Virus record (IMG/VR): IMGVR_UViG_3300009103_000001
Span: 1 to 64,000 of that record
Reading direction: 5' to 3' (one strand)
Length of the DNA: 64,000 nt
Shown: positions 28,093 to 57,817 of the stretch, in pieces
How the letters are laid out: every line of letters begins with the position of its first letter
How positions within the stretch are numbered: the stretch's first letter is position 1
The notes under the pieces: model-generated
Told to the model about the DNA's origin: nothing
Databases searched by the model: none
The model's input: the letters and a program-made list of their open reading frames with translations, nothing else
Program-made: the position numbers and the translations under genes

Positions 28093-28308
28093 ATGGAACA
28101 AATATCTAAAACTATTAATAGAAATTTTTATACTAACCTTAGAGATTTAGGTAGAGGTCATTCAGAAATAATGAAATCCATACAACCCAATAGAAAGGAA
28201 CAATTTTATAAAGATATAGAGTCTTTAATTAAACCAAAACATAAGTGGTGGTCACTATTATTATACGCTTTTAAAAATAAAAGGTTAAAAGGTAAATATG
28301 AAATATGA
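28093..28308 (+). CDS. Hypothetical protein
   Basis: ORF track. Confidence 0.55.
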   Translation: MEQISKTINRNFYTNLRDLGRGHSEIMKSIQPNRKEQFYKDIESLIKPKHKWWSLLLYAFKNKRLKGKYEI

Positions 28309-28907
28309 ATGAAGATTACACATATACCACAAGTGATGCTGATTATATATTAGTGAAAAAATATTTAGAAGGTGATTCTACAGCCTTTACACCCCTTTTT
28401 AACAAATACAAACCGATTTTTTTTAGTAATTTAATTAAATGGTATGGTCAGAATAGTTATAATGATTATGAAGAAATACAAGATATGTCTATGGAATTTT
28501 TGGGTAGAATTGCATCAAAATTACATATGTATGACCCTAAAAAAAGTACTGTAGGTACTTGGATTACTAATTCTATGAGAAATTTTATGATTGAATATTA
28601 TAAAAGAAATAATAGTCAAAAAAGAATACCTAGTCAAAAAAAGATATATTTTGATGAAATACCACATTTTGAACCATCAGATAATGACATTTATAAGAAT
28701 TTAGAAATTAAATCTCACAGAAAGTTAATAAAAAAAATGTTAGAGTCTTTGGGTCACGATGATACTAAAATATTTAACGATATATTCATTAAAGGTAAGA
28801 CACAAGCGGAGGTAGCAAGAGAATTAGGAATTGGGGCTAGTACATTAGAATATAGAGTTAGAAGAGTAAAAAAAAGATTAGAAAAATTTAAACCAAAAGA
28901 TTTTTAA
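28305..28907 (+). CDS. ECF-type RNA polymerase sigma factor
   Basis: Region 2 (IQDMSME.L..I..K...YDP.KS...TWI....RN...EY) and region 4 HTH (QAEVARELGI..STL..R..R.KK.L). Confidence 0.85.
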   Translation: MNEDYTYTTSDADYILVKKYLEGDSTAFTPLFNKYKPIFFSNLIKWYGQNSYNDYEEIQDMSMEFLGRIASKLHMYDPKKSTVGTWITNSMRNFMIEYYKRNNSQKRIPSQKKIYFDEIPHFEPSDNDIYKNLEIKSHRKLIKKMLESLGHDDTKIFNDIFIKGKTQAEVARELGIGASTLEYRVRRVKKRLEKFKPKDF

Positions 28908-30568: not shown

Positions 30569-31411
30569 TTGTCTAAAAAAAAAATGATAAAAACTAAAGA
30601 GTACAATTCCCTAGTTCAGAAACTAAGGGAATTTTTTTTGCAAAAGGGGTTTCTAGAAGTACCCGTTCAATCTAGATTATCAATATTAGCAGCATGTGAA
30701 GACCCATATACGGTTAAGAAGTTTAAGTGGAAAGGTAATGATTGGCCTTTACCACAAACAGGCCAAATGTGGTTAGAACATGAATTACTATCCAATCCTA
30801 GTGAAAATGGTTTTTTCTGTATATCAACATCATACAGACACGAACCAAATCCCATTCCTGGTAGACATGAAACTATATTCCCAATGTTTGAATTTGAAGC
30901 AAAAGGTGATATGGGTGAGTTAATTAAAATGGAATTTGAACTATTAGAACACTTAGGGTTAGATACACCTAAAAGATTGTATTATGATAATATTTGTAAA
31001 GAATATAACATAGACATTTTAGAAACTGAACATGAAACTAAGATGTGGGAAGATTTTGGTTCATCTGTTTCATTAGAGTATTTTCCAGAAAGAACTTCAC
31101 CTTTTTGGAACATGAAACATGGTGGTGATGGAATATTCAATAAAGTAGATGTGATATTATTTGGTCAAGAAACAATTGGTTCAGCCGAAAGAGCAACTAA
31201 TAAAGATGAAATGAGGTATTATTTCAATACTATATCAGATGGTGGTTATAAAAATAAATTATATGATTTATTTGGAGAAAAAAGGGTAAATGAAGAATTA
31301 GAAAAATATTTATCTTTTGATTTTTTTCCTAGATTTGGTGGCGGTATTGGTGTAACTAGACTTTTAAGGGCAATGAAGTTACAAGAAAAAAATATGTTAG
31401 TGACAGTATAG
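30569..31411 (+). CDS. Class IIb aaRS (AsnRS/AspRS-like) catalytic domain only
   Basis: FF..KGFLEV, LPQTGQ, SYRHE...RHE..F.M.E.E, ETIGSAER, GGGIGVTRL; no N-terminal OB domain. Confidence 0.85.
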   Translation: MSKKKMIKTKEYNSLVQKLREFFLQKGFLEVPVQSRLSILAACEDPYTVKKFKWKGNDWPLPQTGQMWLEHELLSNPSENGFFCISTSYRHEPNPIPGRHETIFPMFEFEAKGDMGELIKMEFELLEHLGLDTPKRLYYDNICKEYNIDILETEHETKMWEDFGSSVSLEYFPERTSPFWNMKHGGDGIFNKVDVILFGQETIGSAERATNKDEMRYYFNTISDGGYKNKLYDLFGEKRVNEELEKYLSFDFFPRFGGGIGVTRLLRAMKLQEKNMLVTV

Positions 31412-45812: not shown

Positions 45813-45995
45813 TTAATCCCACATTCTGTAGGTTTTTGGAATCATATCTACCATAGTCATAATAGATTTTCTACTATGAGTAGATTCTAACTCATCATTA
45901 TTCTCTGTTATGATATTATGTTCTTTTAAGAAGAAGTACTGTCTATCAGATACTATAAAAACATCATTTTCTTTGGGTAGGTTAATTACTCTCAT
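45813..45995 (-). CDS. Small hypothetical protein
   Basis: Likely start MRVINL at junction-like AAAGATGAG (track 46037). Confidence 0.5.
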   Translation of the reverse strand: MRVINLPKENDVFIVSDRQYFFLKEHNIITENNDELESTHSRKSIMTMVDMIPKTYRMWD

Positions 45996-46167
45996 CTTTA
46001 TTAACTTCTTTAATCTCAAATACTTTACAATCTTCAATATTACAACACTCTAACATTTCTTCTTTCCATTTTAACATTTTATTTATGTTAGTTGAAATGT
46101 TGTACCCTACGGTAAAGTCATCATTTCTTTCACCATGAATCAACCCTATATATTGTTTCTTACTCAT
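45982..46167 (-). CDS. Small cassette-type protein
   Basis: MSKKQY... starts in a copy of the junction repeat at 46163-46184. Confidence 0.6.
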   Translation of the reverse strand: MSKKQYIGLIHGERNDDFTVGYNISTNINKMLKWKEEMLECCNIEDCKVFEIKEVNKDESN

Positions 46168-46180
46168 CTTTGTTTTGGTT

Positions 46181-46396
46181 TTAATCTCTAAATGTTGGTC
46201 CAGCAAATCCTGGTATATACATAACTCTCATTGTAGTTGTTTCTGCTTGTTCTTGAGTCATTCCTTTGTCAAGATATTTCTGTATTAGCTCTTCTTTCAT
46301 TTTTATACACTGTTTCGTCATTTCTCTATCTTCATCTGTAATACTCTCAACATATCTTTTGAAAAGTCCTTTCTTGGGTTTGAATTCTTTACTCAT
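46181..46396 (-). CDS. Small hypothetical protein
   Basis: ORF track; its stop is the TAA of the junction repeat. Confidence 0.6.
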   Translation of the reverse strand: MSKEFKPKKGLFKRYVESITDEDREMTKQCIKMKEELIQKYLDKGMTQEQAETTTMRVMYIPGFAGPTFRD

Positions 46397-46839
46397 CCTT
46401 TAATAAGTTTGGCAATCAATTTTGATTTTTCAATAGTACTCATATCATCGTTCTCCAATAATTTCAATGTCTTATACACTTTAAATTCATTTTCATCAAA
46501 TTCATTAATACCATTCTCTTCCATCCATTGTATTTTGAGTTTAACATCACCAAGCTCCAACTCCAATCTTTCTTTCTCTTCCGTTAAATCTTCTTTATTG
46601 GTGGCATTACAGAAACCAACCAATTCATGTGCATATACCCAACCAACACTTCTAGAATCAACACAAGACAATATATAATAAGCTTCATATTGTTGATGCT
46701 TGTAATCAACTTTCACACATGGCTCTCCCAAATACACTTCTTTACTCAAGTCACAAGAAGCACCATAAATAAACCCATGAGAACTCTGAGGCATTCCACA
46801 AGGCGCCACCTGCAATTTATAAGTTTTTGTTTTTCCCAT
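46393..46839 (-). CDS. Hypothetical protein
   Basis: Likely start MGKTKT (track 46893). Confidence 0.6.
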   Translation of the reverse strand: MGKTKTYKLQVAPCGMPQSSHGFIYGASCDLSKEVYLGEPCVKVDYKHQQYEAYYILSCVDSRSVGWVYAHELVGFCNATNKEDLTEEKERLELELGDVKLKIQWMEENGINEFDENEFKVYKTLKLLENDDMSTIEKSKLIAKLIKG

Positions 46840-46910
46840 TTTAATTTTTAATATTAGATTTTTAATTTTTTTCACTAAAACAACAATAATCATTATCTAC
46901 AAAAACGTCA

Positions 46911-46951
46911 AATAAAAAAAAGGGGGGTAGGGGGGATTTTTCTTAAGCCGC
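46911..46951 (-). repeat. About 40 bp G/C-run element, copy 1
   Basis: Reverse complement of 55302-55341 apart from homopolymer lengths. Confidence 0.75.
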
Positions 46952-47038
46952 AATTTTTTTACTAATCCACATATAAATTTAACCCTATTATGAATACTCA
47001 TAACAGGGGCTTTTCTTACAAGAACGATATTTATGATT

Positions 47039-47359
47039 ATGAAACTAAAAAGAATAATAAAAGAATCCATATTAGATAACTGGTTTAGAAAGAATACACT
47101 TAAAACCCTTATAAACAGAAGTGCTTATTCTTATAATATGCATGATGTTATAATTAAAAAAGGTGATGATATAATTATATGGTTAAAACCATTTCCCAAA
47201 AGCAGTTATAGTGAAGAAGACCAACAATATGTATTAAACACAGAAAATGAAACTTTATCAGTATATGGAAGAGGATTAAATAATGAACCTGATTCAATAT
47301 ATAATTTATCAGAAAAAGAATACCATGATATATTCAATAAAATATATCATTTAATATGA
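47039..47359 (+). CDS. Leader-family protein
   Basis: MKLKRIIKES after GATATTTATG. Confidence 0.75.
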   Translation: MKLKRIIKESILDNWFRKNTLKTLINRSAYSYNMHDVIIKKGDDIIIWLKPFPKSSYSEEDQQYVLNTENETLSVYGRGLNNEPDSIYNLSEKEYHDIFNKIYHLI

Positions 47360-47805
47360 ATATAAGAAGAATCATAAGGGAAGAAATGGATAACCATATA
47401 ACCAAAGTTATATTAGATACCATTAATGAATATGATATGGACCCTTATGATATTAATAATGATTTATGTGAAGATTTCACAATGGATGTAATTAATAAAA
47501 TGGGAGGATATAACGATAATTTATATGAATTATCTGATGATATGATTTCTAATTTTAGAGACCCAAAATATGCGTTAGATTACTGGGATGGAGAATTAAT
47601 AGAAACACCTTATGGCGTATGGAGCAAAAATGGGTTAGATAGATATGGATACCCTCCCATTCCTTTAAAAGATATTAAAGAAGAATTTAATCATGTATGG
47701 ATATATTACAATGGAAAACATTATGATGCAGAAGAACCTTATGGAGTTAATAACTGGACCGAATTGCCAATGATTAAAAGACAATTAAACTTATATAATA
47801 TATGA
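47356..47805 (+). CDS. Leader-family protein with papain/transglutaminase-like Cys-His-Asp motif
   Basis: INNDLCEDF...HVWIYYNGKHYDAE; paralog of 56979. Confidence 0.7.
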   Translation: MNIRRIIREEMDNHITKVILDTINEYDMDPYDINNDLCEDFTMDVINKMGGYNDNLYELSDDMISNFRDPKYALDYWDGELIETPYGVWSKNGLDRYGYPPIPLKDIKEEFNHVWIYYNGKHYDAEEPYGVNNWTELPMIKRQLNLYNI

Positions 47806-51554: not shown

Positions 51555-51586
51555 CAAAGATAGTAATAATAATTGAATAAAACAAA
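51555..51586 (-). promoter_or_regulatory. Bacteroidota consensus promoter
   Basis: TTTG-20 nt-TATCTTTG. Confidence 0.75.
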
Positions 51587-51595
51587 TAATGGCAT

Positions 51596-51621
51596 AAAAA
51601 AAGACCTCATCTCTGAGGCCT
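51596..51621 (-). terminator. Intrinsic terminator, copy 1
   Basis: GGCCTCA-GAGA-TGAGGTC followed by T7. Confidence 0.75.
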
Positions 51622-51659
51622 TACAGATTTAGAAACAATCTTATGTTATTGTTATAAAA

Positions 51660-51690
51660 CAAATATAGTGATTATTTTTTTAATGGACAA
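51660..51690 (-). promoter_or_regulatory. Bacteroidota-type promoter
   Basis: TTG-20 nt-TATATTTG. Confidence 0.65.
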
Positions 51691-51701
51691 GCCCTTAGCA
51701 T

Positions 51702-51727
51702 AAAAAAAGACCTCATCTCTGAGGCCT
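51702..51727 (-). terminator. Intrinsic terminator, copy 2 (identical hairpin)
   Basis: GGCCTCA-GAGA-TGAGGTC followed by T7. Confidence 0.75.
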
Positions 51728-51892
51728 AGTTTACTAAATGAGATTTACAATAACAAATTTTATTTAGTAAAGACAAAGAGTAAAAAATGGGTTGCCCCTT
51801 TTTTTATCATAATATAAATATAGTGATTATTTTTTAATAAAACAATAGGCCATGTCAAATATTTTTTTTATCTTTGTTATGTCGTTTAGCTA

Positions 51893-51982
51893 AGGACTGC
51901 AGGTACAGACTCCAGCGCCAAGGAATACTTTAAGACCTTTTTTTTTATAAGGCAGGTGTGGCGCCGATTGCCTCTCACATCC
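51893..51982. ncRNA. Candidate structured (pseudoknot) RNA, family unknown
   Basis: GC-rich; GCGCCA/TGGCGC, AAGG/CCTT and AGGCA/TGCCT pairings; flanked by convergent TATCTTTG boxes. Confidence 0.35.
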
Positions 51983-52036
51983 TTAATACAAAGATACGGC
52001 TTTTATTTTTAACGGCAATGGAATATTTATAAAAAG

Positions 52037-52702
52037 ATGCGTAAATCAATCAAAAAAATATTAAGTGAAAACGAATGGGAATGGGTTAATAAGATAGAAC
52101 CTAAACTAACTAAAGACCTAATCTTATGCTCTAACCATGAAAGGTTTAATCCAGGTTGTATGGAAATACTAAATGTATCGAATAGAATAGTATACACGAA
52201 ATCCTTAGAGACTGGTAACCGTTACGCAGACCCTATAGCAGATGTTATGAGGTGGTTAACTGATGGTGATTATCTACTAATGGATGGAACAGGAGAACTG
52301 GTAATACCATTAAAAGAATCAGATGATATGGACTGGATAAGAGATGTGGACCCAATGGTATCATTCGAAGACATTCATAAGGATAACTACCCACTTAGAA
52401 GAGATAGAACTTTTGACGGCTATGATTTAAAATTTGGTGTGAAGATTAAAAACTTGGATGCTATTATAGAAATGACAATGGATTGTAATGGTGATGAAGG
52501 AGAATGGATTGAGGATATTGCATGGTGTATAGTTGTGAATAGTAGCTACTTAAACCATCAAGATGTATACTGTGTTACCTCTCCAAAATATACATGGGAA
52601 GGACAAAGGGCTTGTTTGGATGTATACTTCTACGATAAAAATAATGTTAACATAGCCGACTACTGGGTATCAGATGATATGATTGAGTTATATTATCTGT
52701 GA
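52037..52702 (+). CDS. Leader-family protein, 2 modules
   Basis: MRKSIKKILSENEWEW; LKESDDMDWIRD. Confidence 0.75.
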   Translation: MRKSIKKILSENEWEWVNKIEPKLTKDLILCSNHERFNPGCMEILNVSNRIVYTKSLETGNRYADPIADVMRWLTDGDYLLMDGTGELVIPLKESDDMDWIRDVDPMVSFEDIHKDNYPLRRDRTFDGYDLKFGVKIKNLDAIIEMTMDCNGDEGEWIEDIAWCIVVNSSYLNHQDVYCVTSPKYTWEGQRACLDVYFYDKNNVNIADYWVSDDMIELYYL

Positions 52703-52859: not shown

Positions 52860-52960
52860 CCCTATGGGGCTCCCCCCTGGGGTCCCCCCCGTGGGCGCGT
52901 ATCCCCCCTCCCCGGTATGGCAAGGGTTGCCACAACCAGGGGTCGGTTCCGTTTGCACAC
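52860..52960. other. GC-rich island with four minus-strand G-runs
   Basis: 46 of 60 bases G+C in 52861-52920 within an AT-rich genome. Confidence 0.8.
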
Positions 52961-53142
52961 CTAAATCCTGTAAATCCCAGAAAAAATATGGGCGCTTTTT
53001 TTTTCAGAAAAGCGACTAAAAAATGCCCAGAAAAATTTTTACTAAAAAAGGGGTCTATCTCAATGCACAGTAAGACAAATAAAATAGACTTATAAGTAAT
53101 ACCCAAATGAAAAGAATTTCATATAAATACTTTTCAGTAAAA

Positions 53143-53328
53143 TCATTTAATTTTTTCATCTTTTTTTGGTTTATTACAATGTGAATCGTTCAACCCCAGT
53201 TTCTCAATAATACTACCAGCACATAAACCTATAACAAACGCAAACCCTGTTGTGACACTTATCTTAAATCCTAACAAAATTACACCCACACCTATAATGT
53301 TAAATAATATATTTCCTATTTTACTCAT
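53143..53328 (-). CDS. Cassette: small membrane protein
   Basis: Starts and ends in junction repeats; two TM. Confidence 0.65.
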   Translation of the reverse strand: MSKIGNILFNIIGVGVILLGFKISVTTGFAFVIGLCAGSIIEKLGLNDSHCNKPKKDEKIK

Positions 53329-53455
53329 CTTTGTTTTGGTTTAAGTAATATAATTCGACTATTTCTTCAGGTGTTAGTTCCATCATTGTATCTGTGCAAT
53401 AAGGTGCGTCTTCTTGAATCCATCGAATAAATTTTATCATTTCTTCTTTACTCAT
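53321..53455 (-). CDS. Cassette: small protein ending LNQNKDE
   Basis: Start MSKEEM in junction (track 53503). Confidence 0.6.
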   Translation of the reverse strand: MSKEEMIKFIRWIQEDAPYCTDTMMELTPEEIVELYYLNQNKDE

Positions 53456-53670
53456 CTTTGGTTTAGTTTTTCGATTAAATAATCTTTCAATCCTTCTATC
53501 CAAGTGGGAATCATATCATAATACTGGTGTGCTGAAGGGGTAAAAGTCATATTACGATTATCTTCATAGTATTGATATTTATCTTTTAGTTCTTGAATTT
53601 TAAGCTTAACATCTTCAGTGGTTGAAACCTTTATCATGCTTACTATTTCTTTCTTAATTATTTCACTCAT
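53452..53670 (-). CDS. Cassette: small protein
   Basis: Junction-bounded. Confidence 0.65.
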   Translation of the reverse strand: MSEIIKKEIVSMIKVSTTEDVKLKIQELKDKYQYYEDNRNMTFTPSAHQYYDMIPTWIEGLKDYLIEKLNQR

Positions 53671-53682
53671 CTTCTTTTTGGT

Positions 53683-53811
53683 TTATCTAGTTTCATAATA
53701 ACCTTTGCTTTTGTAATTCACATTTTTGTCTTTTCCAATGTAAAACAAGAACCATATAATGGTAATAAGAAAAAACAATTTGAGTATGAATCCAATATCA
53801 ATTCTTCTCAT
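53683..53811 (-). CDS. Cassette: 42 aa membrane peptide (not in track)
   Basis: MRRIDIGFILKLFFLITIIWFLFYIG... Confidence 0.55.
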   Translation of the reverse strand: MRRIDIGFILKLFFLITIIWFLFYIGKDKNVNYKSKGYYETR

Positions 53812-54098
53812 CTTTGTTTTGGTTTAATATAATCGTATCTAATATGTAAAGCACATGCCTTTGAGTCACCTACAATATCACCAATAGGTTGTATATCGTA
53901 CAGATATATTCCTTCAATATCTTTATATACAGGATTTGATTTCATATAATCCTTTTTACGATTCCACCATTCATTAAAAGTTTCATTTAGTTTCGTACCT
54001 TCAGCCCTAACACACCAATTTGGGTATTCGCCGTTTATACATTGTTTATTCAATGTTGTATCGTGTTGTAGGGGGTTATCTACTTTAATTACTTTCAT
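53808..54098 (-). CDS. Cassette: hypothetical protein ending KPKQR
   Basis: Junction-bounded. Confidence 0.65.
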   Translation of the reverse strand: MKVIKVDNPLQHDTTLNKQCINGEYPNWCVRAEGTKLNETFNEWWNRKKDYMKSNPVYKDIEGIYLYDIQPIGDIVGDSKACALHIRYDYIKPKQR

Positions 54099-54110
54099 CT
54101 TTGTTTTGGT

Positions 54111-54248
54111 TTAATCTTTTGACATCATATAAAATAATAACATATAGATTGCCATTAATATAGAGCCATTGGATTGTCCAACACACATAAAGTAAGTCGA
54201 AGCAATCATTGCAGCAATACTAAAATATCTCCATTTACCTTTATTCAT
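54111..54248 (-). CDS. Cassette: 45 aa membrane peptide (not in track)
   Basis: MNKGKWRYFSIAAMIAST... Confidence 0.55.
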   Translation of the reverse strand: MNKGKWRYFSIAAMIASTYFMCVGQSNGSILMAIYMLLFYMMSKD

Positions 54249-54260
54249 CTTTGTTTTGGT

Positions 54261-54467
54261 TTAATGACCCCACTTTTTATTAAATTCTTTGTCTGTTCGA
54301 AGTTTTTCTAAAAATTCATCTTCTGAATAAACGGAATGACTCTTCGATGGAAATGGTGTTTTTAATTCTACTTCTTTTAACCATTTATTATCCATCATAT
54401 CCACATTATCCATATATTTTCTCCATAGTGGATTTTCGTCTTTTGGGTTTGTTTTATACATAATCAT
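54261..54467 (-). CDS. Cassette: small protein
   Basis: Stop is the first TAA of the junction. Confidence 0.65.
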   Translation of the reverse strand: MIMYKTNPKDENPLWRKYMDNVDMMDNKWLKEVELKTPFPSKSHSVYSEDEFLEKLRTDKEFNKKWGH

Positions 54468-54631
54468 CTTTGTTTTGGTTTTAATTCAATGTACTTATTA
54501 AATTGTCTTTTATATTCATTCCACTCTTCATCTGTTGGCGGTGTTTCCCTATCTAACCAACTTTTGATATCAATCTCCAACTTTAATCTGAGGTTGTTTA
54601 TCGCTTTATCAATTCCTGTATCAATCATCAT
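54464..54631 (-). CDS. Cassette: 55 aa protein (not in track)
   Basis: MMIDTGIDKA...KPKQR. Confidence 0.6.
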   Translation of the reverse strand: MMIDTGIDKAINNLRLKLEIDIKSWLDRETPPTDEEWNEYKRQFNKYIELKPKQR

Positions 54632-54636
54632 CTTTG

Positions 54637-54783
54637 TTATGTGTAATATTCATATCCCATCATACGCTCATTATCATCCAATCTCTTTTGGAGTTCTTTC
54701 TTTAACTTTTTGTTCTTGGTTTTACTTATAGCTCTTTTTAAACTATTGTTACTGTTCTTAAGTTGTTTAATAAGTCCTTTCAT
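54637..54783 (-). CDS. Cassette: 48 aa basic protein (not in track)
   Basis: MKGLIKQLKN... Confidence 0.55.
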   Translation of the reverse strand: MKGLIKQLKNSNNSLKRAISKTKNKKLKKELQKRLDDNERMMGYEYYT

Positions 54784-54798
54784 CTTCTTTGTTTTGTT

Positions 54799-55062
54799 TT
54801 AAACTTTTAATTCAATCATTTCACATATCATATCAAACTGTTCCATGTTGTTACATTTACCATTATATTTAACTGAGTAATTTGGACCATCTTGATTAAA
54901 CCCTTTATCGGTTGTTGTTATAGTAACTTTACCGTTTAATACGGTTAGGAAAGCTCCTTGTCCATCATCTTCCCAAACATTACCCTTTTGATATTTGTCT
55001 TCGTTTAACCATTGGCTCATCCATCTCCATCCTTTTTCTTCTAATTCTTCTCTAGTCATCAT
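54799..55062 (-). CDS. Cassette: hypothetical protein
   Basis: Junction-bounded. Confidence 0.65.
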   Translation of the reverse strand: MMTREELEEKGWRWMSQWLNEDKYQKGNVWEDDGQGAFLTVLNGKVTITTTDKGFNQDGPNYSVKYNGKCNNMEQFDMICEMIELKV

Positions 55063-55246
55063 CTTTGTTTTGGTTTAATATACCTCTGCCTACACCTTCC
55101 TCTATCATAAACAATTGTTGCCAAAGTGCTATAGCAGTTTCTGTATCTCCGGATTCTTTTATCTTCATTATTTCATTGTCCATTTCAACAAAATCTTCTT
55201 TAGTCTTGCATTGAAATAGTCTTTCTAATATTTCTTCTTTACTCAT
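55052..55246 (-). CDS. Cassette: small protein ending LNQNKDDD
   Basis: First gene below promoter 55262-55290. Confidence 0.65.
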   Translation of the reverse strand: MSKEEILERLFQCKTKEDFVEMDNEIMKIKESGDTETAIALWQQLFMIEEGVGRGILNQNKDDD

Positions 55247-55261
55247 CTTTGTTTTGGTTTA

Positions 55262-55290
55262 AATATAAGTAATACATTTTAGATTATCAA
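55262..55290 (-). promoter_or_regulatory. Sigma70-like promoter abutting a junction repeat
   Basis: TTGATA-17 nt-TATATT. Confidence 0.6.
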
Positions 55291-55301
55291 TAAAAAAAAT
55301 G

Positions 55302-55341
55302 GCGGCTTAAGAAAAATCCCCCCTACCCCCCTTTTTTATTT
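55302..55341 (+). repeat. About 40 bp G/C-run element, copy 2
   Basis: GCGGCTTAAGAAAAATCCCCCCTACCCCCCTTTTTTATTT. Confidence 0.75.
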
Positions 55342-55360
55342 CTATTTTTATCTAATTCTT

Positions 55361-55513
55361 TTAACTATGATTGTCAAAAATTATTGGTTCAGTACCATCA
55401 TGAATATTGCCAAGTTTTATGTAAAATGTGGCTTTTGAAAGAGTAAACATAAAATAGCCTTCCATCACATCTTTTTTAAAGTTATGTTTCTTATTTTTCT
55501 TTATTATTTTCAT
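55361..55513 (-). CDS. Cassette: 50 aa protein (not in track)
   Basis: Shares 63 bp (2 mismatches) with 50463-50525. Confidence 0.6.
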   Translation of the reverse strand: MKIIKKNKKHNFKKDVMEGYFMFTLSKATFYIKLGNIHDGTEPIIFDNHS

Positions 55514-55656
55514 CTTTGTTTTGGTTGTTCTCTATACAATTCTTCTAACCGTTTCTTATGTGATTTAACATACTTTCTATTTAAGTCTAATAATGTCATC
55601 TTATATCTATAGTCTTTATCCGTTAGATATCTCCATATATGTTTAATAAATCTCAT
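55510..55656 (-). CDS. Cassette: 48 aa protein (not in track)
   Basis: MRFIKHIWRY...QPKQR. Confidence 0.55.
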   Translation of the reverse strand: MRFIKHIWRYLTDKDYRYKMTLLDLNRKYVKSHKKRLEELYREQPKQR

Positions 55657-55849
55657 CTTTGTTTTGGTTTTTAATATCCAACACCCATTCCATTAAATCA
55701 ATCATACTACATTGTGTTCTGAATTGTTCTCTTTTTTCAGATATACCCCACAAACCTCCATTTGGTGGATTATTTAAGAAATGAGTTAATTCATCTTTAT
55801 GTTCATTCATTTCTATTAACTTGTTATATATTTCTTCTCTGCTTTTCAT
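55643..55849 (-). CDS. Cassette: small protein ending NQNKDEIY
   Basis: Junction-bounded. Confidence 0.65.
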   Translation of the reverse strand: MKSREEIYNKLIEMNEHKDELTHFLNNPPNGGLWGISEKREQFRTQCSMIDLMEWVLDIKNQNKDEIY

Positions 55850-55965
55850 CTTCTTTTTGGTTTTTCATATTATAATTAATGTATATATTATTACAGAACA
55901 AGCAATTAATATTCCTATAATATGTAACCCCTTCTGTAACTTATTTAATTTATTCCAATCCTCTC

Positions 55966-56151
55966 TCATCTTTGTTTTAATTTAATTAATTTATCACACA
56001 ACCTATATTGTTCTTCCTGTATATAATGTTTGATTAATTCATCTATATCATTATTTGTATATTCTATTTTACCCAATCTAATATCTAGAAATTTAAAATT
56101 CATTTCTATATTTCTCTTAACAGTTTTAAATCTATTACTAAGTTCACTCAT
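55966..56151 (-). CDS. Cassette: small protein ending KLKQR
   Basis: Junction-bounded. Confidence 0.6.
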   Translation of the reverse strand: MSELSNRFKTVKRNIEMNFKFLDIRLGKIEYTNNDIDELIKHYIQEEQYRLCDKLIKLKQR

Positions 56152-56307
56152 CTGTATGTGCTTTGTCTATTCCTGTGTCAATCATCTTTGTAGAGTTTTA
56201 TTAAATCTTTAATAATGTAATACCCTGCCATTAAAAAAGAGAATATTGCTATCCCATAAAATATTAATCCTATTATACCTATTATTTTAATCATGTTCAT
56301 CTTTGTT

Positions 56308-56811
56308 TTAATTTTTTTTCCATCCACAATCACAATGATTGGCAATACCTAACATATCGTCTTTTTCCCAACCAAGTTCCTTTAATACTTTCATTTGGGT
56401 TTCTTCATCTCTATCCATACCAAATAGGTCTTTACATCCATTGTATTTCCTACTCCAACAGTTTGGTTTGTGTGATGCTTTAATATCTCCCCATTTTTTT
56501 AATTTGGTTTCATACATAATAAAACCTGGAAGATGGCCTATTACCCACCACTCTTTACAACCATTGTATTCATCGTTCCAATCATACATTGCCATTAAAT
56601 CCATCTTATAATAATTCTCATCATCTCTAGATAAGTTTTCATTAATATCGACAGAGACTGCATAAGAATGAAATTTTGGGTTTTCTGAAAACCTTTTAAC
56701 AAAGGGTATCTCTAAAACTTGGTCGAAGGTGTCTACTTCATACTCACTATCTTCAAAACCTGAAAAATAATTTGGTCTTCTTTCTATAAATTTCTTTTTA
56801 CTCATCTTCAT
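56308..56811 (-). CDS. Cassette: hypothetical protein with Cys/His motifs
   Basis: Junction-bounded; HKPNC...C...HCDC. Confidence 0.65.
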   Translation of the reverse strand: MKMSKKKFIERRPNYFSGFEDSEYEVDTFDQVLEIPFVKRFSENPKFHSYAVSVDINENLSRDDENYYKMDLMAMYDWNDEYNGCKEWWVIGHLPGFIMYETKLKKWGDIKASHKPNCWSRKYNGCKDLFGMDRDEETQMKVLKELGWEKDDMLGIANHCDCGWKKN

Positions 56812-56978
56812 TTTAATTTATATACAATGGTCCACAATGGGTGAATCATTTGTATTAGTTAAATTTCTTATTAGTTTAACATCATCTTTAATAATGTGTG
56901 TAGTACCATCGGTATATAAGATTTCTACAATACCATCTTCAATTGTAACTTCTTTAATGTTATCTAAATTAAACTCTC

Positions 56979-57272
56979 TCATCTTCGTTTTGATTTTAAA
57001 TTTCTTTTAGCTAAAGGTAATTCCGTCCAGTTATCAACTCCATTAGGTACTTCAGAATCATAATGTTTCCCATTATAATAAACCCAACAATGAGTTATTT
57101 CATCATCAACAGATACTAATGGAATACACTTTTCATCACTTATACCTTTCATCTTATTAATAACAGTCGTAGCAAACTCACCACATAAACCATTGTTAAT
57201 ATCATAAGGACTATAGTTTATTTTTTTATATTTGTTAATAGTATCTAATATAACCTCTGTTATGTTACTCAT
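56979..57272 (-). CDS. Cassette: papain/transglutaminase-like Cys-His-Asp protein
   Basis: INNGLCGEFA...HCWVYYNGKHYDSE; paralog of 47356 without the leader. Confidence 0.7.
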   Translation of the reverse strand: MSNITEVILDTINKYKKINYSPYDINNGLCGEFATTVINKMKGISDEKCIPLVSVDDEITHCWVYYNGKHYDSEVPNGVDNWTELPLAKRNLKSKRR

Positions 57273-57304
57273 CTTCTTTTGGTTTATTTATATGTTACAA
57301 ACAA

Positions 57305-57538
57305 TTAAAATAAGATTAATGGGTATTCATTCAGATATAGCCCATATATAAACAACCCTATTGATGTAAAAAGCAGTAGCCAAAACCTTCTTTTAGGGGC
57401 TGTTCCCTGTTCAATTTCTATAAACCCCCATAACATTTTTTTTCTACTAGACCATTTCTCTTCATACGTGGCTATGTTTAACACAATGCTAAATATTAGG
57501 AGTATTACCACTACTGCTTTTAATTCAAATCCTACCAT
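57305..57538 (-). CDS. Cassette: two-TM membrane protein
   Basis: Hydrophobic segments. Confidence 0.6.
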   Translation of the reverse strand: MVGFELKAVVVILLIFSIVLNIATYEEKWSSRKKMLWGFIEIEQGTAPKRRFWLLLFTSIGLFIYGLYLNEYPLILF

Positions 57539-57773
57539 CTTCTTTTATTTTTTTTAATTCAATACATTTTTCGAAATCGTTCTTTTCTGCGAAGTAATCT
57601 AATATTAAATCAAAGTCAATATCATTTAAATCTTTGCGTATATCATGAGCTACCCATATTTCTTCTTCATTGGTATCAATTAATTCGTCAAATGTATTCT
57701 TACCTGTTAGTATTTTATAAGAATTAATCATAGATAATTCAATAAATTTATCATTAGATACTATTTTACTCAT
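57525..57773 (-). CDS. Cassette: first gene of the array
   Basis: MSK start in junction; YF.EK..FEKC.EL motif. Confidence 0.65.
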   Translation of the reverse strand: MSKIVSNDKFIELSMINSYKILTGKNTFDELIDTNEEEIWVAHDIRKDLNDIDFDLILDYFAEKNDFEKCIELKKIKEDGRI

Positions 57774-57788
57774 CTTTGTTTTGATTTA

Positions 57789-57817
57789 AAAATAAGTAAT
57801 ATATTGGATATTATCAA
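57789..57817 (-). promoter_or_regulatory. Sigma70-like promoter heading the cassette array
   Basis: TTGATA-17 nt-TATTTT; near copy of 55262-55290. Confidence 0.55.

What the first reader, a model, noticed from the sequence alone, without database searches (positions are those of the whole stretch)
53055..57817. Gene-cassette array built on a universal three-frame stop/start linker
About 20 ORFs of roughly 13-167 aa are each preceded by TTAAACCAAAACAAAGATGAGTAA or a close variant. In this 24-mer, TAA is at 2-4, ATG at 17-19, TGA at 18-20 and TAA at 22-24, so stops fall in all three frames around one start. All three exits are used: ...KKWGH* and ...ELKV* (first TAA), ...KPKQR*, KLKQR* and KSKRR* (TGA overlapping ATG), ...LNQNKDE* (last TAA). 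The same motif forms the 5' leader right after the promoters at 55262 and 57789 and recurs at 46163. Any ORF inserted between two copies is therefore terminated, coupled and given an A-rich Bacteroidota-style initiation site. I infer an integron-like, recombination-fed library of small early effectors. It is analogous to, but distinct from, T4-type PeSL cassettes and mycobacteriophage start-associated sequences. No integrase is in this window.
Basis: partly seen in the sequence, partly recalled or inferred. Interest (0 to 1): 0.9.

Follow-up and report, generated by a model that had tools for sequence, protein, structure and literature searches.

The report
Shuffled phage mini-gene array, universal linker
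A large uncultured phage of Bacteroidota carries about 23 tiny genes, each preceded by the same 24-base stop/start linker; in related phages these genes appear in many different orders with breaks exactly at the linker, so it looks like both a translation signal and a gene-swapping joint.

Summary
On the minus strand of 53055-57817, 23 small ORFs (34-165 aa, plus a 13-aa remnant) sit in two promoter-led runs. Nearly all start with the 24-mer TTAAACCAAAACAAAGATGAGTAA or a variant, which no other gene in the window uses except a mini-array at 46 kb.

- **Distribution:** the same linker occurs in co-oriented clusters in over 100 other IMG/VR contigs. In 185,579 bacterial and archaeal genomes it occurs only as scattered single copies.
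- **Three stops:** of 282 junctions, upstream ORFs end 55 times at the 5' TAA, 57 times at ATGA and 77 times at +6.
- **Shuffling:** the best-conserved cassette has 14 kinds of downstream and 17 kinds of upstream neighbour in about 20 loci. Homology stops at position -15/-16, and one two-cassette indel breaks inside the linker.
- **Fit to a start site:** the linker is unstructured and has A at -3, -6, -12 and -13, the known Flavobacterium initiation determinants.

Best reading: a class-specific start and coupling adaptor for host-promoter-driven (probably early) mini-genes, which is also the short homology where cassettes recombine. "Integron-like" holds only as an analogy: there is no integrase and no attC-type structure. 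I rate it a new variant of PeSL/start-associated-sequence elements. I found no description of it in the literature I could search.

The parts
57787..57817 (-). Promoter-like site P1 (TTG-N21-TATTTTTA), 13 nt before the ATG of the first cassette
   Evidence: It fits the Bacteroidota -33/-7 pattern TTG-N18-21-TAHHTTT[GA] (consensus from PMC6847099). The sequence is shown.
55361..57773 (-). Run 1: 11 cassettes. g01 57525-57773, g02 57305-57538, g03 56979-57272, g04 56818-56982, g05 56308-56805, g06 56178-56300, g07 55966-56151, g08 55865-55969, g09 55643-55849, g10 55510-55656, g11 55361-55513. Linkers here are mostly variants (AAATYAAAAC...).
56144..56185 (-). 13-aa mini-ORF behind a degenerate linker. 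It is a remnant of the 5' end of a g15-like cassette, and its stop overlaps the start region of g07.
   Evidence: 13-aa ORF; window 56159-56191 is 97% identical to the start of the g15 homologue in L100
55293..55337 (.). 45-nt A-run / G- or C-tract / T-run element between run 1 and promoter P2. A second copy, inverted and 98% identical, lies at 46916-46960.
   Evidence: I4. No significant fold. Role unknown; it may be a terminator or insulator.
55260..55290 (-). Promoter-like site P2 (TTG-N21-TATATTTA), 13 nt before the ATG of g12
53055..55246 (-). Run 2: 12 cassettes. g12 55052-55246, g13 54799-55062, g14 54637-54783, g15 54464-54631, g16 54261-54467, g17 54111-54248, g18 53808-54098, g19 53683-53811, g20 53452-53670, g21 53321-53455, g22 53143-53328, g23 53055-53159. 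Seven of the 12 linkers are exact.
55239..55262 (-). Exact copy of the 24-nt linker TTAAACCAAAACAAAGATGAGTAA. A second exact copy is at 53321-53344. Near copies are at 53804-53827, 54241-54264, 54460-54483, 55055-55078 and 57766-57789, and exact 17-mer cores precede the ATGs at 54098 and 55656.
52993..53014 (-). Terminator-like hairpin just past the last cassette, at the edge of a conserved G+C-rich block (52860-53050)
45813..46893 (-). Mini-array: a 166-aa gene (46393-46893), then a 71-aa ORF (46181-46396, ATGA overlap), then a linker-led 61-aa ORF (45982-46167, linker 46160-46183), then a 60-aa ORF behind a degenerate linker (45813-45995)

Best explanation
The array is a hypervariable module of small genes in a roughly 210-kb phage of a Bacteroidota host. 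It is probably an early, host-takeover type module.

Two host-type promoters each drive a polycistronic run of 11-12 cassettes. Every cassette begins with a 24-nt adaptor, T-TAA-ACCAAAACAAAG-ATG-A-G-TAA, which I think does two jobs.

1. **On the mRNA** it is an unstructured, T-free, A/C-rich initiation region suited to ribosomes that do not use Shine-Dalgarno pairing. It also stops the ribosome translating the upstream gene within about 15 nt of the next AUG, whichever frame that gene is in (TAA at -15, TGA in ATGA, TAA at +6). Any two cassettes are therefore translationally coupled.
2. **On the DNA** its 17-24 nt of identity at every gene boundary is where homologous recombination or template switching exchanges, inserts and deletes whole cassettes. 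These events occur between copies and between co-infecting relatives, and they build a shared pool of hundreds of mini-gene families.

**Shown:** the anatomy, the phage-specific clustered distribution, the use of all three exits, and the linker-bounded mosaicism.

**Inferred:** translation and coupling activity, early timing, the recombination pathway, and what the cassettes do.
For: **Class-specific linker**
- 22 sites in the window, all on one strand and all at small ORFs. The 64 other ORFs of at least 90 aa lack it.

**Phage-specific, clustered distribution**
- At least 120 IMG/VR stretches hold the exact 17-mer. 74 loci have two or more sites, always co-oriented, with up to 23 sites in 6.5 kb.
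- 1.33 Mb of unrelated viral DNA has only 3 hits.
- 185,579 bacterial and archaeal genomes give only single copies, without flank conservation.

**Fit to a translation-initiation region**
- The linker is fixed to the ATG and has A at -3, -6, -12 and -13, the positive determinants in F. johnsoniae (PMC6847099).
- Unpaired probability is 0.65 at linkers against 0.47 inside cassettes (p = 6e-7), and the 24-mer has no self-structure.
- SD-like motifs occur at only 6 of 64 other starts.
- T9SS sorting domains point to a Bacteroidota host.

**Coupling**
- Of 282 junctions, 55 upstream ORFs stop at -15, 57 at ATGA and 77 at +6. About 87% stop within 16 nt of the ATG.

**Shuffling**
- Shared cassettes (82-96% nt identity) occur in different orders in L100, L104, L241 and L243.
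- 330 linker-led ORFs fall into 228 families. 18 of 26 informative families have more than one kind of downstream neighbour.
- The g05 family has 14 downstream kinds in 19 loci and 17 upstream kinds in 20 loci. Identity falls from over 0.8 to background exactly at -15/-16.
- A precise two-cassette indel has about 97% identical flanks and its junction inside the linker.
- Homology-block ends occur at 0.97 per linker-led start against 0.13 per other gene start.

**Promoters**
- Both fit TTG-N21-TAHHTTTA, with the ATG 13 nt downstream.
Against: - There are no expression, Ribo-seq or reporter data, so translation, coupling and early timing are inferred.
- The generic Bacteroidota rule (A-rich, unstructured) does not explain the near-invariant C at -5, -10 and -11 and G at -1. 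Other genes of the same phage lack these. Some specific reader of the sequence, protein or RNA, may therefore exist.
- Host genomes do not use the motif as a repeated signal.
- Comparison loci were found by the motif itself, or by one cassette, so there is ascertainment bias.
- Because only the linker separates the genes, selection for intact genes would also place surviving breakpoints near it.
- No recombinase was identified, and only 64 kb of the 210-kb contig was available.
Confidence: 0.65

Rival explanations
1. The linker is only a strong translation-initiation motif. The mosaic order comes from ordinary illegitimate recombination in a dispensable region, filtered by selection for intact genes, and the linker plays no causal part in exchange.
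For: The linker is fixed to the ATG, unstructured, and has A at the four known positions. Ordinary gene starts in the same loci also show a 3-fold enrichment of homology-block ends.
Against: Block ends are 13-fold enriched at linker starts, 0.97 per start against 0.13 per ordinary start. One indel junction lies inside the shared linker between about 97% identical flanks. Identity steps from background to over 0.8 exactly at -15/-16 in 17 independent contexts. Linker length variants are as expected from unequal exchange.
Confidence: 0.15
2. The linker is an operator read by a dedicated factor, either instead of or in addition to its adaptor role. Candidates are a phage translational repressor or endoribonuclease, in the manner of T4 RegA/RegB acting on early mRNAs, or a ribosome component. 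Such a factor would switch the whole gene class on or off together.
For: C at -5, -10 and -11, G at -1 and A at +4 are almost invariant, and conservation extends into codons 2-3. A generic A-rich start site does not require this. Use is strictly class-specific within the phage. The RegA/RegB comparison is from my own knowledge.
Against: No candidate factor was identified. No antisense partner for the linker exists elsewhere in the window. The invariance could equally come from homogenisation by recombination.
Confidence: 0.12
3. It is a true integron-like system. An unidentified site-specific recombinase, encoded elsewhere in the genome, excises and inserts cassettes at the linker.
For: Cassette-sized units with variable content and order behind shared promoters.
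Against: No integrase or recombinase family was found in 40 of the window's 43 ORFs of at least 150 aa. The linker is 24 nt, asymmetric and unstructured, unlike attC. It contains the start codon, so it is tied to translation.
Confidence: 0.04
4. The repeat is a promoter for a phage-specific RNA polymerase or sigma factor, so each mini-gene is transcribed separately as a leaderless or near-leaderless mRNA.
For: The window encodes a sigma-70-family protein at 28305-28907. The motif is repeated before every gene of one class.
Against: The motif abuts and includes the ATG, and upstream ORFs read through it in two of three frames. Recognisable host-type promoters occur only twice, upstream of the linker. 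The flanks upstream of -16 are not conserved.
Confidence: 0.04

Closest known systems
PeSL (promoter-early stem-loop) cassettes of T4-type phages (Arbiol et al. 2010, PMC2839356)
   Same: Short conserved regulatory elements sit in front of small ORFan genes in hyperplastic regions. Recombination between the copies produces insertions, deletions and replacements between relatives (compared).
   Different: A PeSL is a composite of a sigma-70 promoter, a stem-loop terminator and an SD sequence, so each gene is its own transcription unit. Here the repeat is a 24-nt unstructured stop/start adaptor with no promoter and no hairpin, about 11 cassettes share one promoter, and the host has no SD mechanism. 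Mini-circles could not be tested.
Start-associated sequences (SAS) of Cluster K mycobacteriophages (Pope et al. 2011, PMC3203893)
   Same: An asymmetric short repeat, in one orientation, sits right at the start codons of non-structural genes. It is rare in the host genome, sometimes contains the upstream stop codon, and has a suspected role in translation initiation.
   Different: SAS is 13 bp (GGGATAGGAGCCC), contains an SD core, lies 3-7 bp from the start, and occurs 11-19 times scattered over half a genome. It has not been linked to cassette shuffling or to three-frame termination. Here the repeat includes the ATG and two codons, lacks an SD, forms tight arrays, and marks recombination boundaries.
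Integron gene-cassette arrays
   Same: Promoterless cassettes sit in one orientation behind a common promoter, with variable content and order.
   Different: No IntI was found, there is no attI or attC hairpin site, and the repeat is a translation signal. Exchange is most simply explained by homology.
Kozak-like initiation regions of Flavobacterium johnsoniae (Baez et al. 2019, PMC6847099)
   Same: A at -3, -6, -12 and -13, low structure, and no SD.
   Different: That is a statistical tendency of host genes. The feature here is a fixed 24-nt sequence with invariant C and G positions, used by only one phage gene class.
Host-takeover module of Bacillus phage SPO1 (Stewart et al. 1998; recalled from memory, not checked here)
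   Same: A cluster of about 24 small early genes with uniformly strong initiation signals behind early promoters.
   Different: The SPO1 signals are strong SD sequences. As far as I know, they have not been described as a frame-independent stop/start adaptor or as exchange points.

Membership tests
Integron | Adjacent intI tyrosine recombinase | tested here: not met
   No integrase or recombinase Pfam family was found in 40 of the window's 43 ORFs of at least 150 aa. The rest of the 210-kb contig was not available.
Integron | attC sites: imperfect inverted repeats that fold into a hairpin | tested here: not met
   The 24-mer has an MFE of 0 and no pairing. Linkers are more unpaired than cassette interiors.
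Integron | Promoterless cassettes expressed from a shared upstream promoter | tested here: inconclusive
   Only two promoter-like sites serve 23 cassettes. This is a sequence prediction, with no transcript data.
Integron | Cassette content and order vary between relatives | tested here: met
PeSL (T4-type) | Each element contains a strong sigma-70-type early promoter | tested here: not met
   The linker itself carries no -33/-7 pair. Flanks upstream of -16 are unconserved, and only two promoter-like sites exist.
PeSL (T4-type) | Each element contains a stable stem-loop terminator or attenuator | tested here: not met
   Only the single inter-run spacer at 55293-55337 has G tracts, and its fold is not significant.
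PeSL (T4-type) | Located before ORFans in hypervariable regions, with recombination between copies making indels and replacements | tested here: met
PeSL (T4-type) | Mini-circles formed by exchange between nearby copies | not testable with these tools
   This needs reads or PCR from the source sample.
Start-associated sequence (Cluster K) | Short asymmetric repeat at start codons, one orientation, non-structural genes, rare in the host | tested here: met
   The features are as defined.
Start-associated sequence (Cluster K) | Sequence GGGATAGGAGCCC with an SD core able to pair with 16S rRNA | tested here: not met
   The consensus is A/C-rich with no SD.
Bacteroidota SD-independent initiation region | A at -3, -6, -12 and -13; low structure; no extra AUG near the start | tested here: met
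   Activity itself was not tested.

The most novel reading that the evidence does not exclude
The 24-nt adaptor is a purpose-built joint that combines translation and recombination. It lets a broad network of aquatic Bacteroidota phages, whose g05-bearing contigs include Tara Oceans scaffolds, trade hundreds of mini-genes freely in any order and any frame. That would be an integrase-free functional counterpart of an integron. The linker would then be a sequence tag for harvesting thousands of early host-takeover or anti-defence genes directly from metagenomes.
Probability: 0.45. Interest if true: 0.85.

Novelty: new variant of a known kind. Interest (0 to 1): 0.7.

Why it matters
- **Translation:** how internal cistrons are translated in Bacteroidota, which lack Shine-Dalgarno pairing, is an open question. 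A natural, fixed, 24-nt element that precedes hundreds of unrelated genes is a ready-made test object for initiation and for termination-reinitiation in these organisms.
- **Phage evolution:** it gives a clear example of gene-by-gene mosaicism with defined breakpoints, and shows that such shuffling can rest on a translation signal rather than on a promoter-terminator unit or a site-specific recombinase.
- **Discovery:** the linker is an easy probe for collecting small early phage genes. This class is rich in inhibitors of host functions and defences in other phages. It is the approach already used with conserved regulatory sequences in archaeal viruses, according to the abstract of PMC11065993.
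- **Tools:** it may also serve as a portable expression and coupling part for Bacteroidota genetics.

Tried and rejected
- **Cultured relatives:** there was no megablast or blastn match of the array to 50,697 phage records. A 48-nt promoter-plus-linker query gave only chance hits. Protein searches with the 984-aa protein and with Hsp70 found no close cultured relative.
- **Promoter searches:** my first promoter pattern used the wrong spacer and missed both sites. The exact TATTACTTAT promoter box is not shared by relatives.
- **RNA families:** Rfam gave no match in the whole window or in a sensitive search of 52.5-58 kb.
- **Trans-acting antisense RNA against the linker:** outside the array's own antisense strand, the best duplexes are weak and lie inside genes. 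The candidate small transcripts at 51.5-52 kb score only -5 to -9 kcal/mol.
- **Cassette function:** Pfam and PHROGs found nothing above threshold. The g05 family has 72 representatives in 1.84 billion proteins. Its model is confident (pLDDT 92), but there is no PDB sequence match, no significant PDB fold match, and one unnamed viral match.
- **Synteny through the neighbouring thioredoxin:** the only related contig, L247 (67% identity), has no array there. The other 78 loci served as a negative control.
- **Host use of the motif:** hits in bacterial genomes are single, lack the conserved flanks, and are not enriched at gene starts.
- **Literature:** searches for the motif string and for descriptions in Flavobacteriia phages found nothing relevant.
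- **16S rRNA complementarity:** not tested, because no host 16S sequence was in hand.

Full report
**What is there**

The window equals the first 64 kb of IMG/VR contig IMGVR_UViG_3300009103_000001 (210,157 bp). This follows from loci L052, L013 and L244, which match it at identical coordinates.

- The window has about 28% G+C and no tRNA genes.
- It encodes phage-style and auxiliary functions: Hsp70, thymidylate synthase, an M23 peptidase, NUDIX, thioredoxin and a sigma-70-family protein.
- Three of its proteins carry type IX secretion sorting domains (Por_Secre_tail, CHU_C). By established knowledge these domains are confined to Bacteroidota and their relatives, so the host is very probably a member of that phylum.
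- SD-like motifs precede only 6 of 64 larger genes.

**Checking the observation**

The feature is on the minus strand.

- The 17-mer AAACCAAAACAAAG+ATG occurs 10 times exactly. Within 4 mismatches it occurs 22 times on the minus strand, 21 between 53159 and 57773 and one at 46167. Shuffles give 2.7.
- After moving three starts to the linker-led ATG, the array holds 23 ORFs of 34-165 aa and a 13-aa mini-ORF.
- The other 64 ORFs of at least 90 aa have A/T-rich starts. They have almost no C at -5, -10 and -11 (0.03-0.06) and G at -1 in only 0.08. The linker therefore marks one gene class.

The array is two runs. Each is headed by a site that fits the Bacteroidota promoter pattern TTG-N21-TAHHTTTA, with the ATG 13 nt after it (57787-57817 and 55260-55290; consensus from PMC6847099). 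That spacing predicts a leader of only about 9 nt. Run 2 has 7 exact linkers out of 12. Run 1 has mostly a variant 'dialect' (AAATYAAAAC...).

**The consensus and its spread**

- 74 loci have two or more sites, always on one strand, with up to 23 sites in 6.5 kb.
- In 266 unique sites from 115 loci, positions outside the searched core are conserved: T-15 0.82, T-16 0.58, A+4 0.95, G+5 0.58, T+6 0.69, A+7 0.77 and A+8 0.76.
- ORFs behind the linker are small, with a median of about 60 aa.
- As a control, 79 unrelated viral loci (1.33 Mb, thioredoxin neighbourhoods) hold only 3 hits.
- In one genome from each of 185,579 bacterial and archaeal species, the 17-mer occurs only singly. About 37% of the hits whose organism is listed are in Bacteroidota. 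The hits lack the conserved flanks and are not enriched at gene starts.

Clustered use is therefore a property of these phages, not of host genes. Of 119 viral loci, 93 are linked by stretches of at least 100 nt at 75% identity or more, and 106 are linked at protein level. The carriers thus share a gene pool and are probably a broad related group. Many of the 'small' contigs may be fragments of large genomes.

**Three-frame termination**

For 282 junctions with an identifiable upstream ORF, the stop lies as follows:

| Stop position | Junctions |
|---|---|
| TAA at -15 | 55 |
| TGA of ATGA | 57 |
| +6 to +8 | 77 |

About 87% of stops lie within 16 nt of the ATG. The linker interior (-12 to -1) contains no T, so it has no stop and no AUG in any frame. 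Upstream ORFs can therefore read through it, adding short hydrophilic tails such as KPKQR or LNQNKDE.

**Fit to a translation signal**

- The linker is fixed to the ATG.
- It has A at -3, -6, -12 and -13. These are the four positions shown by ribosome profiling and reporters to promote initiation in F. johnsoniae (PMC6847099).
- It is predicted to be more single-stranded than cassette interiors (0.65 against 0.47, p = 6e-7), and it has no self-structure.

That rule does not explain the invariant C and G positions. This is the main reason to keep a 'specific reader' rival alive.

**Shuffling**

The result is clear: they are not.

- Single cassettes at 82-96% nt identity occur in other contigs in different orders. 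g09 abuts g19 in L104, whereas nine genes separate them in the window. L243 has the order F4-g19-F13-g05. L100 has g09...g20...g15.
- Within the 380-kb contig, two versions of one region differ by a roughly 380-nt insert of exactly two cassettes. The flanks are about 97% identical and the junction lies inside the linker.
- Among 330 linker-led ORFs there are 228 families, of which 169 are singletons. 18 of 26 informative families have more than one kind of downstream neighbour.
- The best-conserved cassette, g05, was traced in 23 metagenome contigs (Tara Oceans scaffolds among them) and 4 viral contigs; about 20 of these loci were informative. It has 14 kinds of downstream neighbour in 19 loci and 17 kinds of upstream neighbour in 20 loci.
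- When 17 distinct contexts are aligned on the ATG, majority-base frequency is 0.38-0.52 upstream of -16 and at least 0.8 from -15 onward.
- Homology-block ends fall within 20 nt of a linker-led start 13 times more often than random points do, against 3 times for other gene starts. That is 0.97 ends per linker-led start against 0.13 per other start.
- Traces of imprecise events exist. The 13-aa ORF at 56185 is the 5' stump of a g15-like cassette. Short (TTAAAACAAAG) and +3 (…CAAAGAAG) linker variants also occur.
- The cassettes are real genes overall. Differences between homologues total 199, 125 and 353 at codon positions 1, 2 and 3, and g05 is clearly under purifying selection.

**Interpretation**

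The most economical model is a dual-purpose adaptor.

- On the mRNA it gives every cassette the same SD-independent start site, and it terminates the preceding ORF next to it in any frame. This permits coupling along an 11-12-gene transcript.
- On the DNA its identity at every boundary is the substrate for homologous exchange, which yields a shared and highly diverse cassette pool.

Early expression is inferred from the host-type promoters and from the phage's own sigma factor, which is presumably for later genes. An integron in the strict sense is not supported, because there is no integrase and no attC-like site. A PeSL in the strict sense is not supported either, because there is no promoter or hairpin in each unit. 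The element has the position and orientation rules of mycobacteriophage start-associated sequences, but not their sequence or SD core.

**Limits**

- Nothing here measures expression.
- The comparison set was ascertained through the motif or through one cassette.
- Only 64 kb of the genome could be read.
- No cultured relative was found.
- Cassette functions are unknown.
- Searches of the paper library for the motif and for related descriptions found nothing. This is absence from that library, not proof of novelty.

**Verdict**

This is a new variant of the known kind 'conserved regulatory repeat that mediates modular shuffling of small phage genes'. Its notable features are the frame-independent stop/start design, the non-SD host context, and its wide occurrence in uncultured phages.

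Noticed in passing
window 8187, 8961, 9394, 9736, 10880, 11218, 12055, 15006, 41168, 41475, 42173, 43002, 44058, 47356, 48816, 52037, 57854, 61411, 62313 (gene starts, + strand): About 19 plus-strand genes begin with the same N-terminal peptide, roughly M-[ND]-[IL]-[KR]-[KR]-I-I-R-E-E-[IM]-[DN]-D-F-x-W-[IV]-K-D. This is either a large paralogous family or a shared N-terminal tag. The peptide is also present in the distant relative L247.
   Followed up: partly
window 56979-57272 (-) and 47356-47805 (+): Array cassette g03 has a paralogue outside the array (39% aa identity, up to 83% nt identity in stretches). The paralogue carries the MNIRRIIREEMD tag and a 47-aa insert, so the same domain is used in two expression classes.
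   Followed up: yes
window 46916-46960 and 55293-55337: A 45-nt element (A-run, GGCGGCTTAAG, CCCCCCTACCCCCC, T-run) is present twice in inverted orientation at 98% identity, in each case just upstream of a minus-strand gene run. It also occurs in L016 at 93% identity. No significant fold was found and its role is unknown.
   Followed up: partly
window 52860-53050: A G+C-rich block of about 200 nt, with several C6-7 and G4-6 tracts, lies between the end of the array and the convergent gene at 52037-52702. It is 82% conserved in L016 (a 72.6-kb contig). There is no Rfam match, and the fold z-score is -1.8.
   Followed up: partly
window 51555-52020 (- strand): Four Bacteroidota-type promoter-like sites lie here. 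Three are each followed by about 70-130 nt without an ORF, and two share the same terminator hairpin (AGGCCTCAGAGATGAGGTCT followed by T7). These are candidate small RNAs. They have no Rfam match and only weak complementarity to the linker.
   Followed up: partly
L100, L033, L040, L048, L006, L095, L044, L014, L009, L026, L074, L091 (IMG/VR contigs): Many linker arrays lie at or within a few kb of contig ends. Either assemblies break in these hypervariable repeats, or the arrays sit near physical genome ends.
   Followed up: no
window 56308-56805 (-), cassette g05: The 165-aa g05 protein gives a confident predicted fold (pLDDT 92) with invariant H112, C116, C158 and C160. It has no significant PDB match and one unnamed viral match. 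The family has only 72 representatives in 1.84 billion proteins.
   Followed up: yes
L243 / L245 (IMGVR_UViG_3300030102_006934, 380 kb): This contig holds two roughly 97% identical versions of the same cassette region, at 90.7 kb and at its end. That suggests either a real duplication or an assembly that joins two strain variants.
   Followed up: no
window 30569-31411 (+): A 280-aa protein matches the catalytic core of class II aminoacyl-tRNA synthetases (D/K/N type) at E = 6e-11. It is much shorter than a full synthetase.
   Followed up: no
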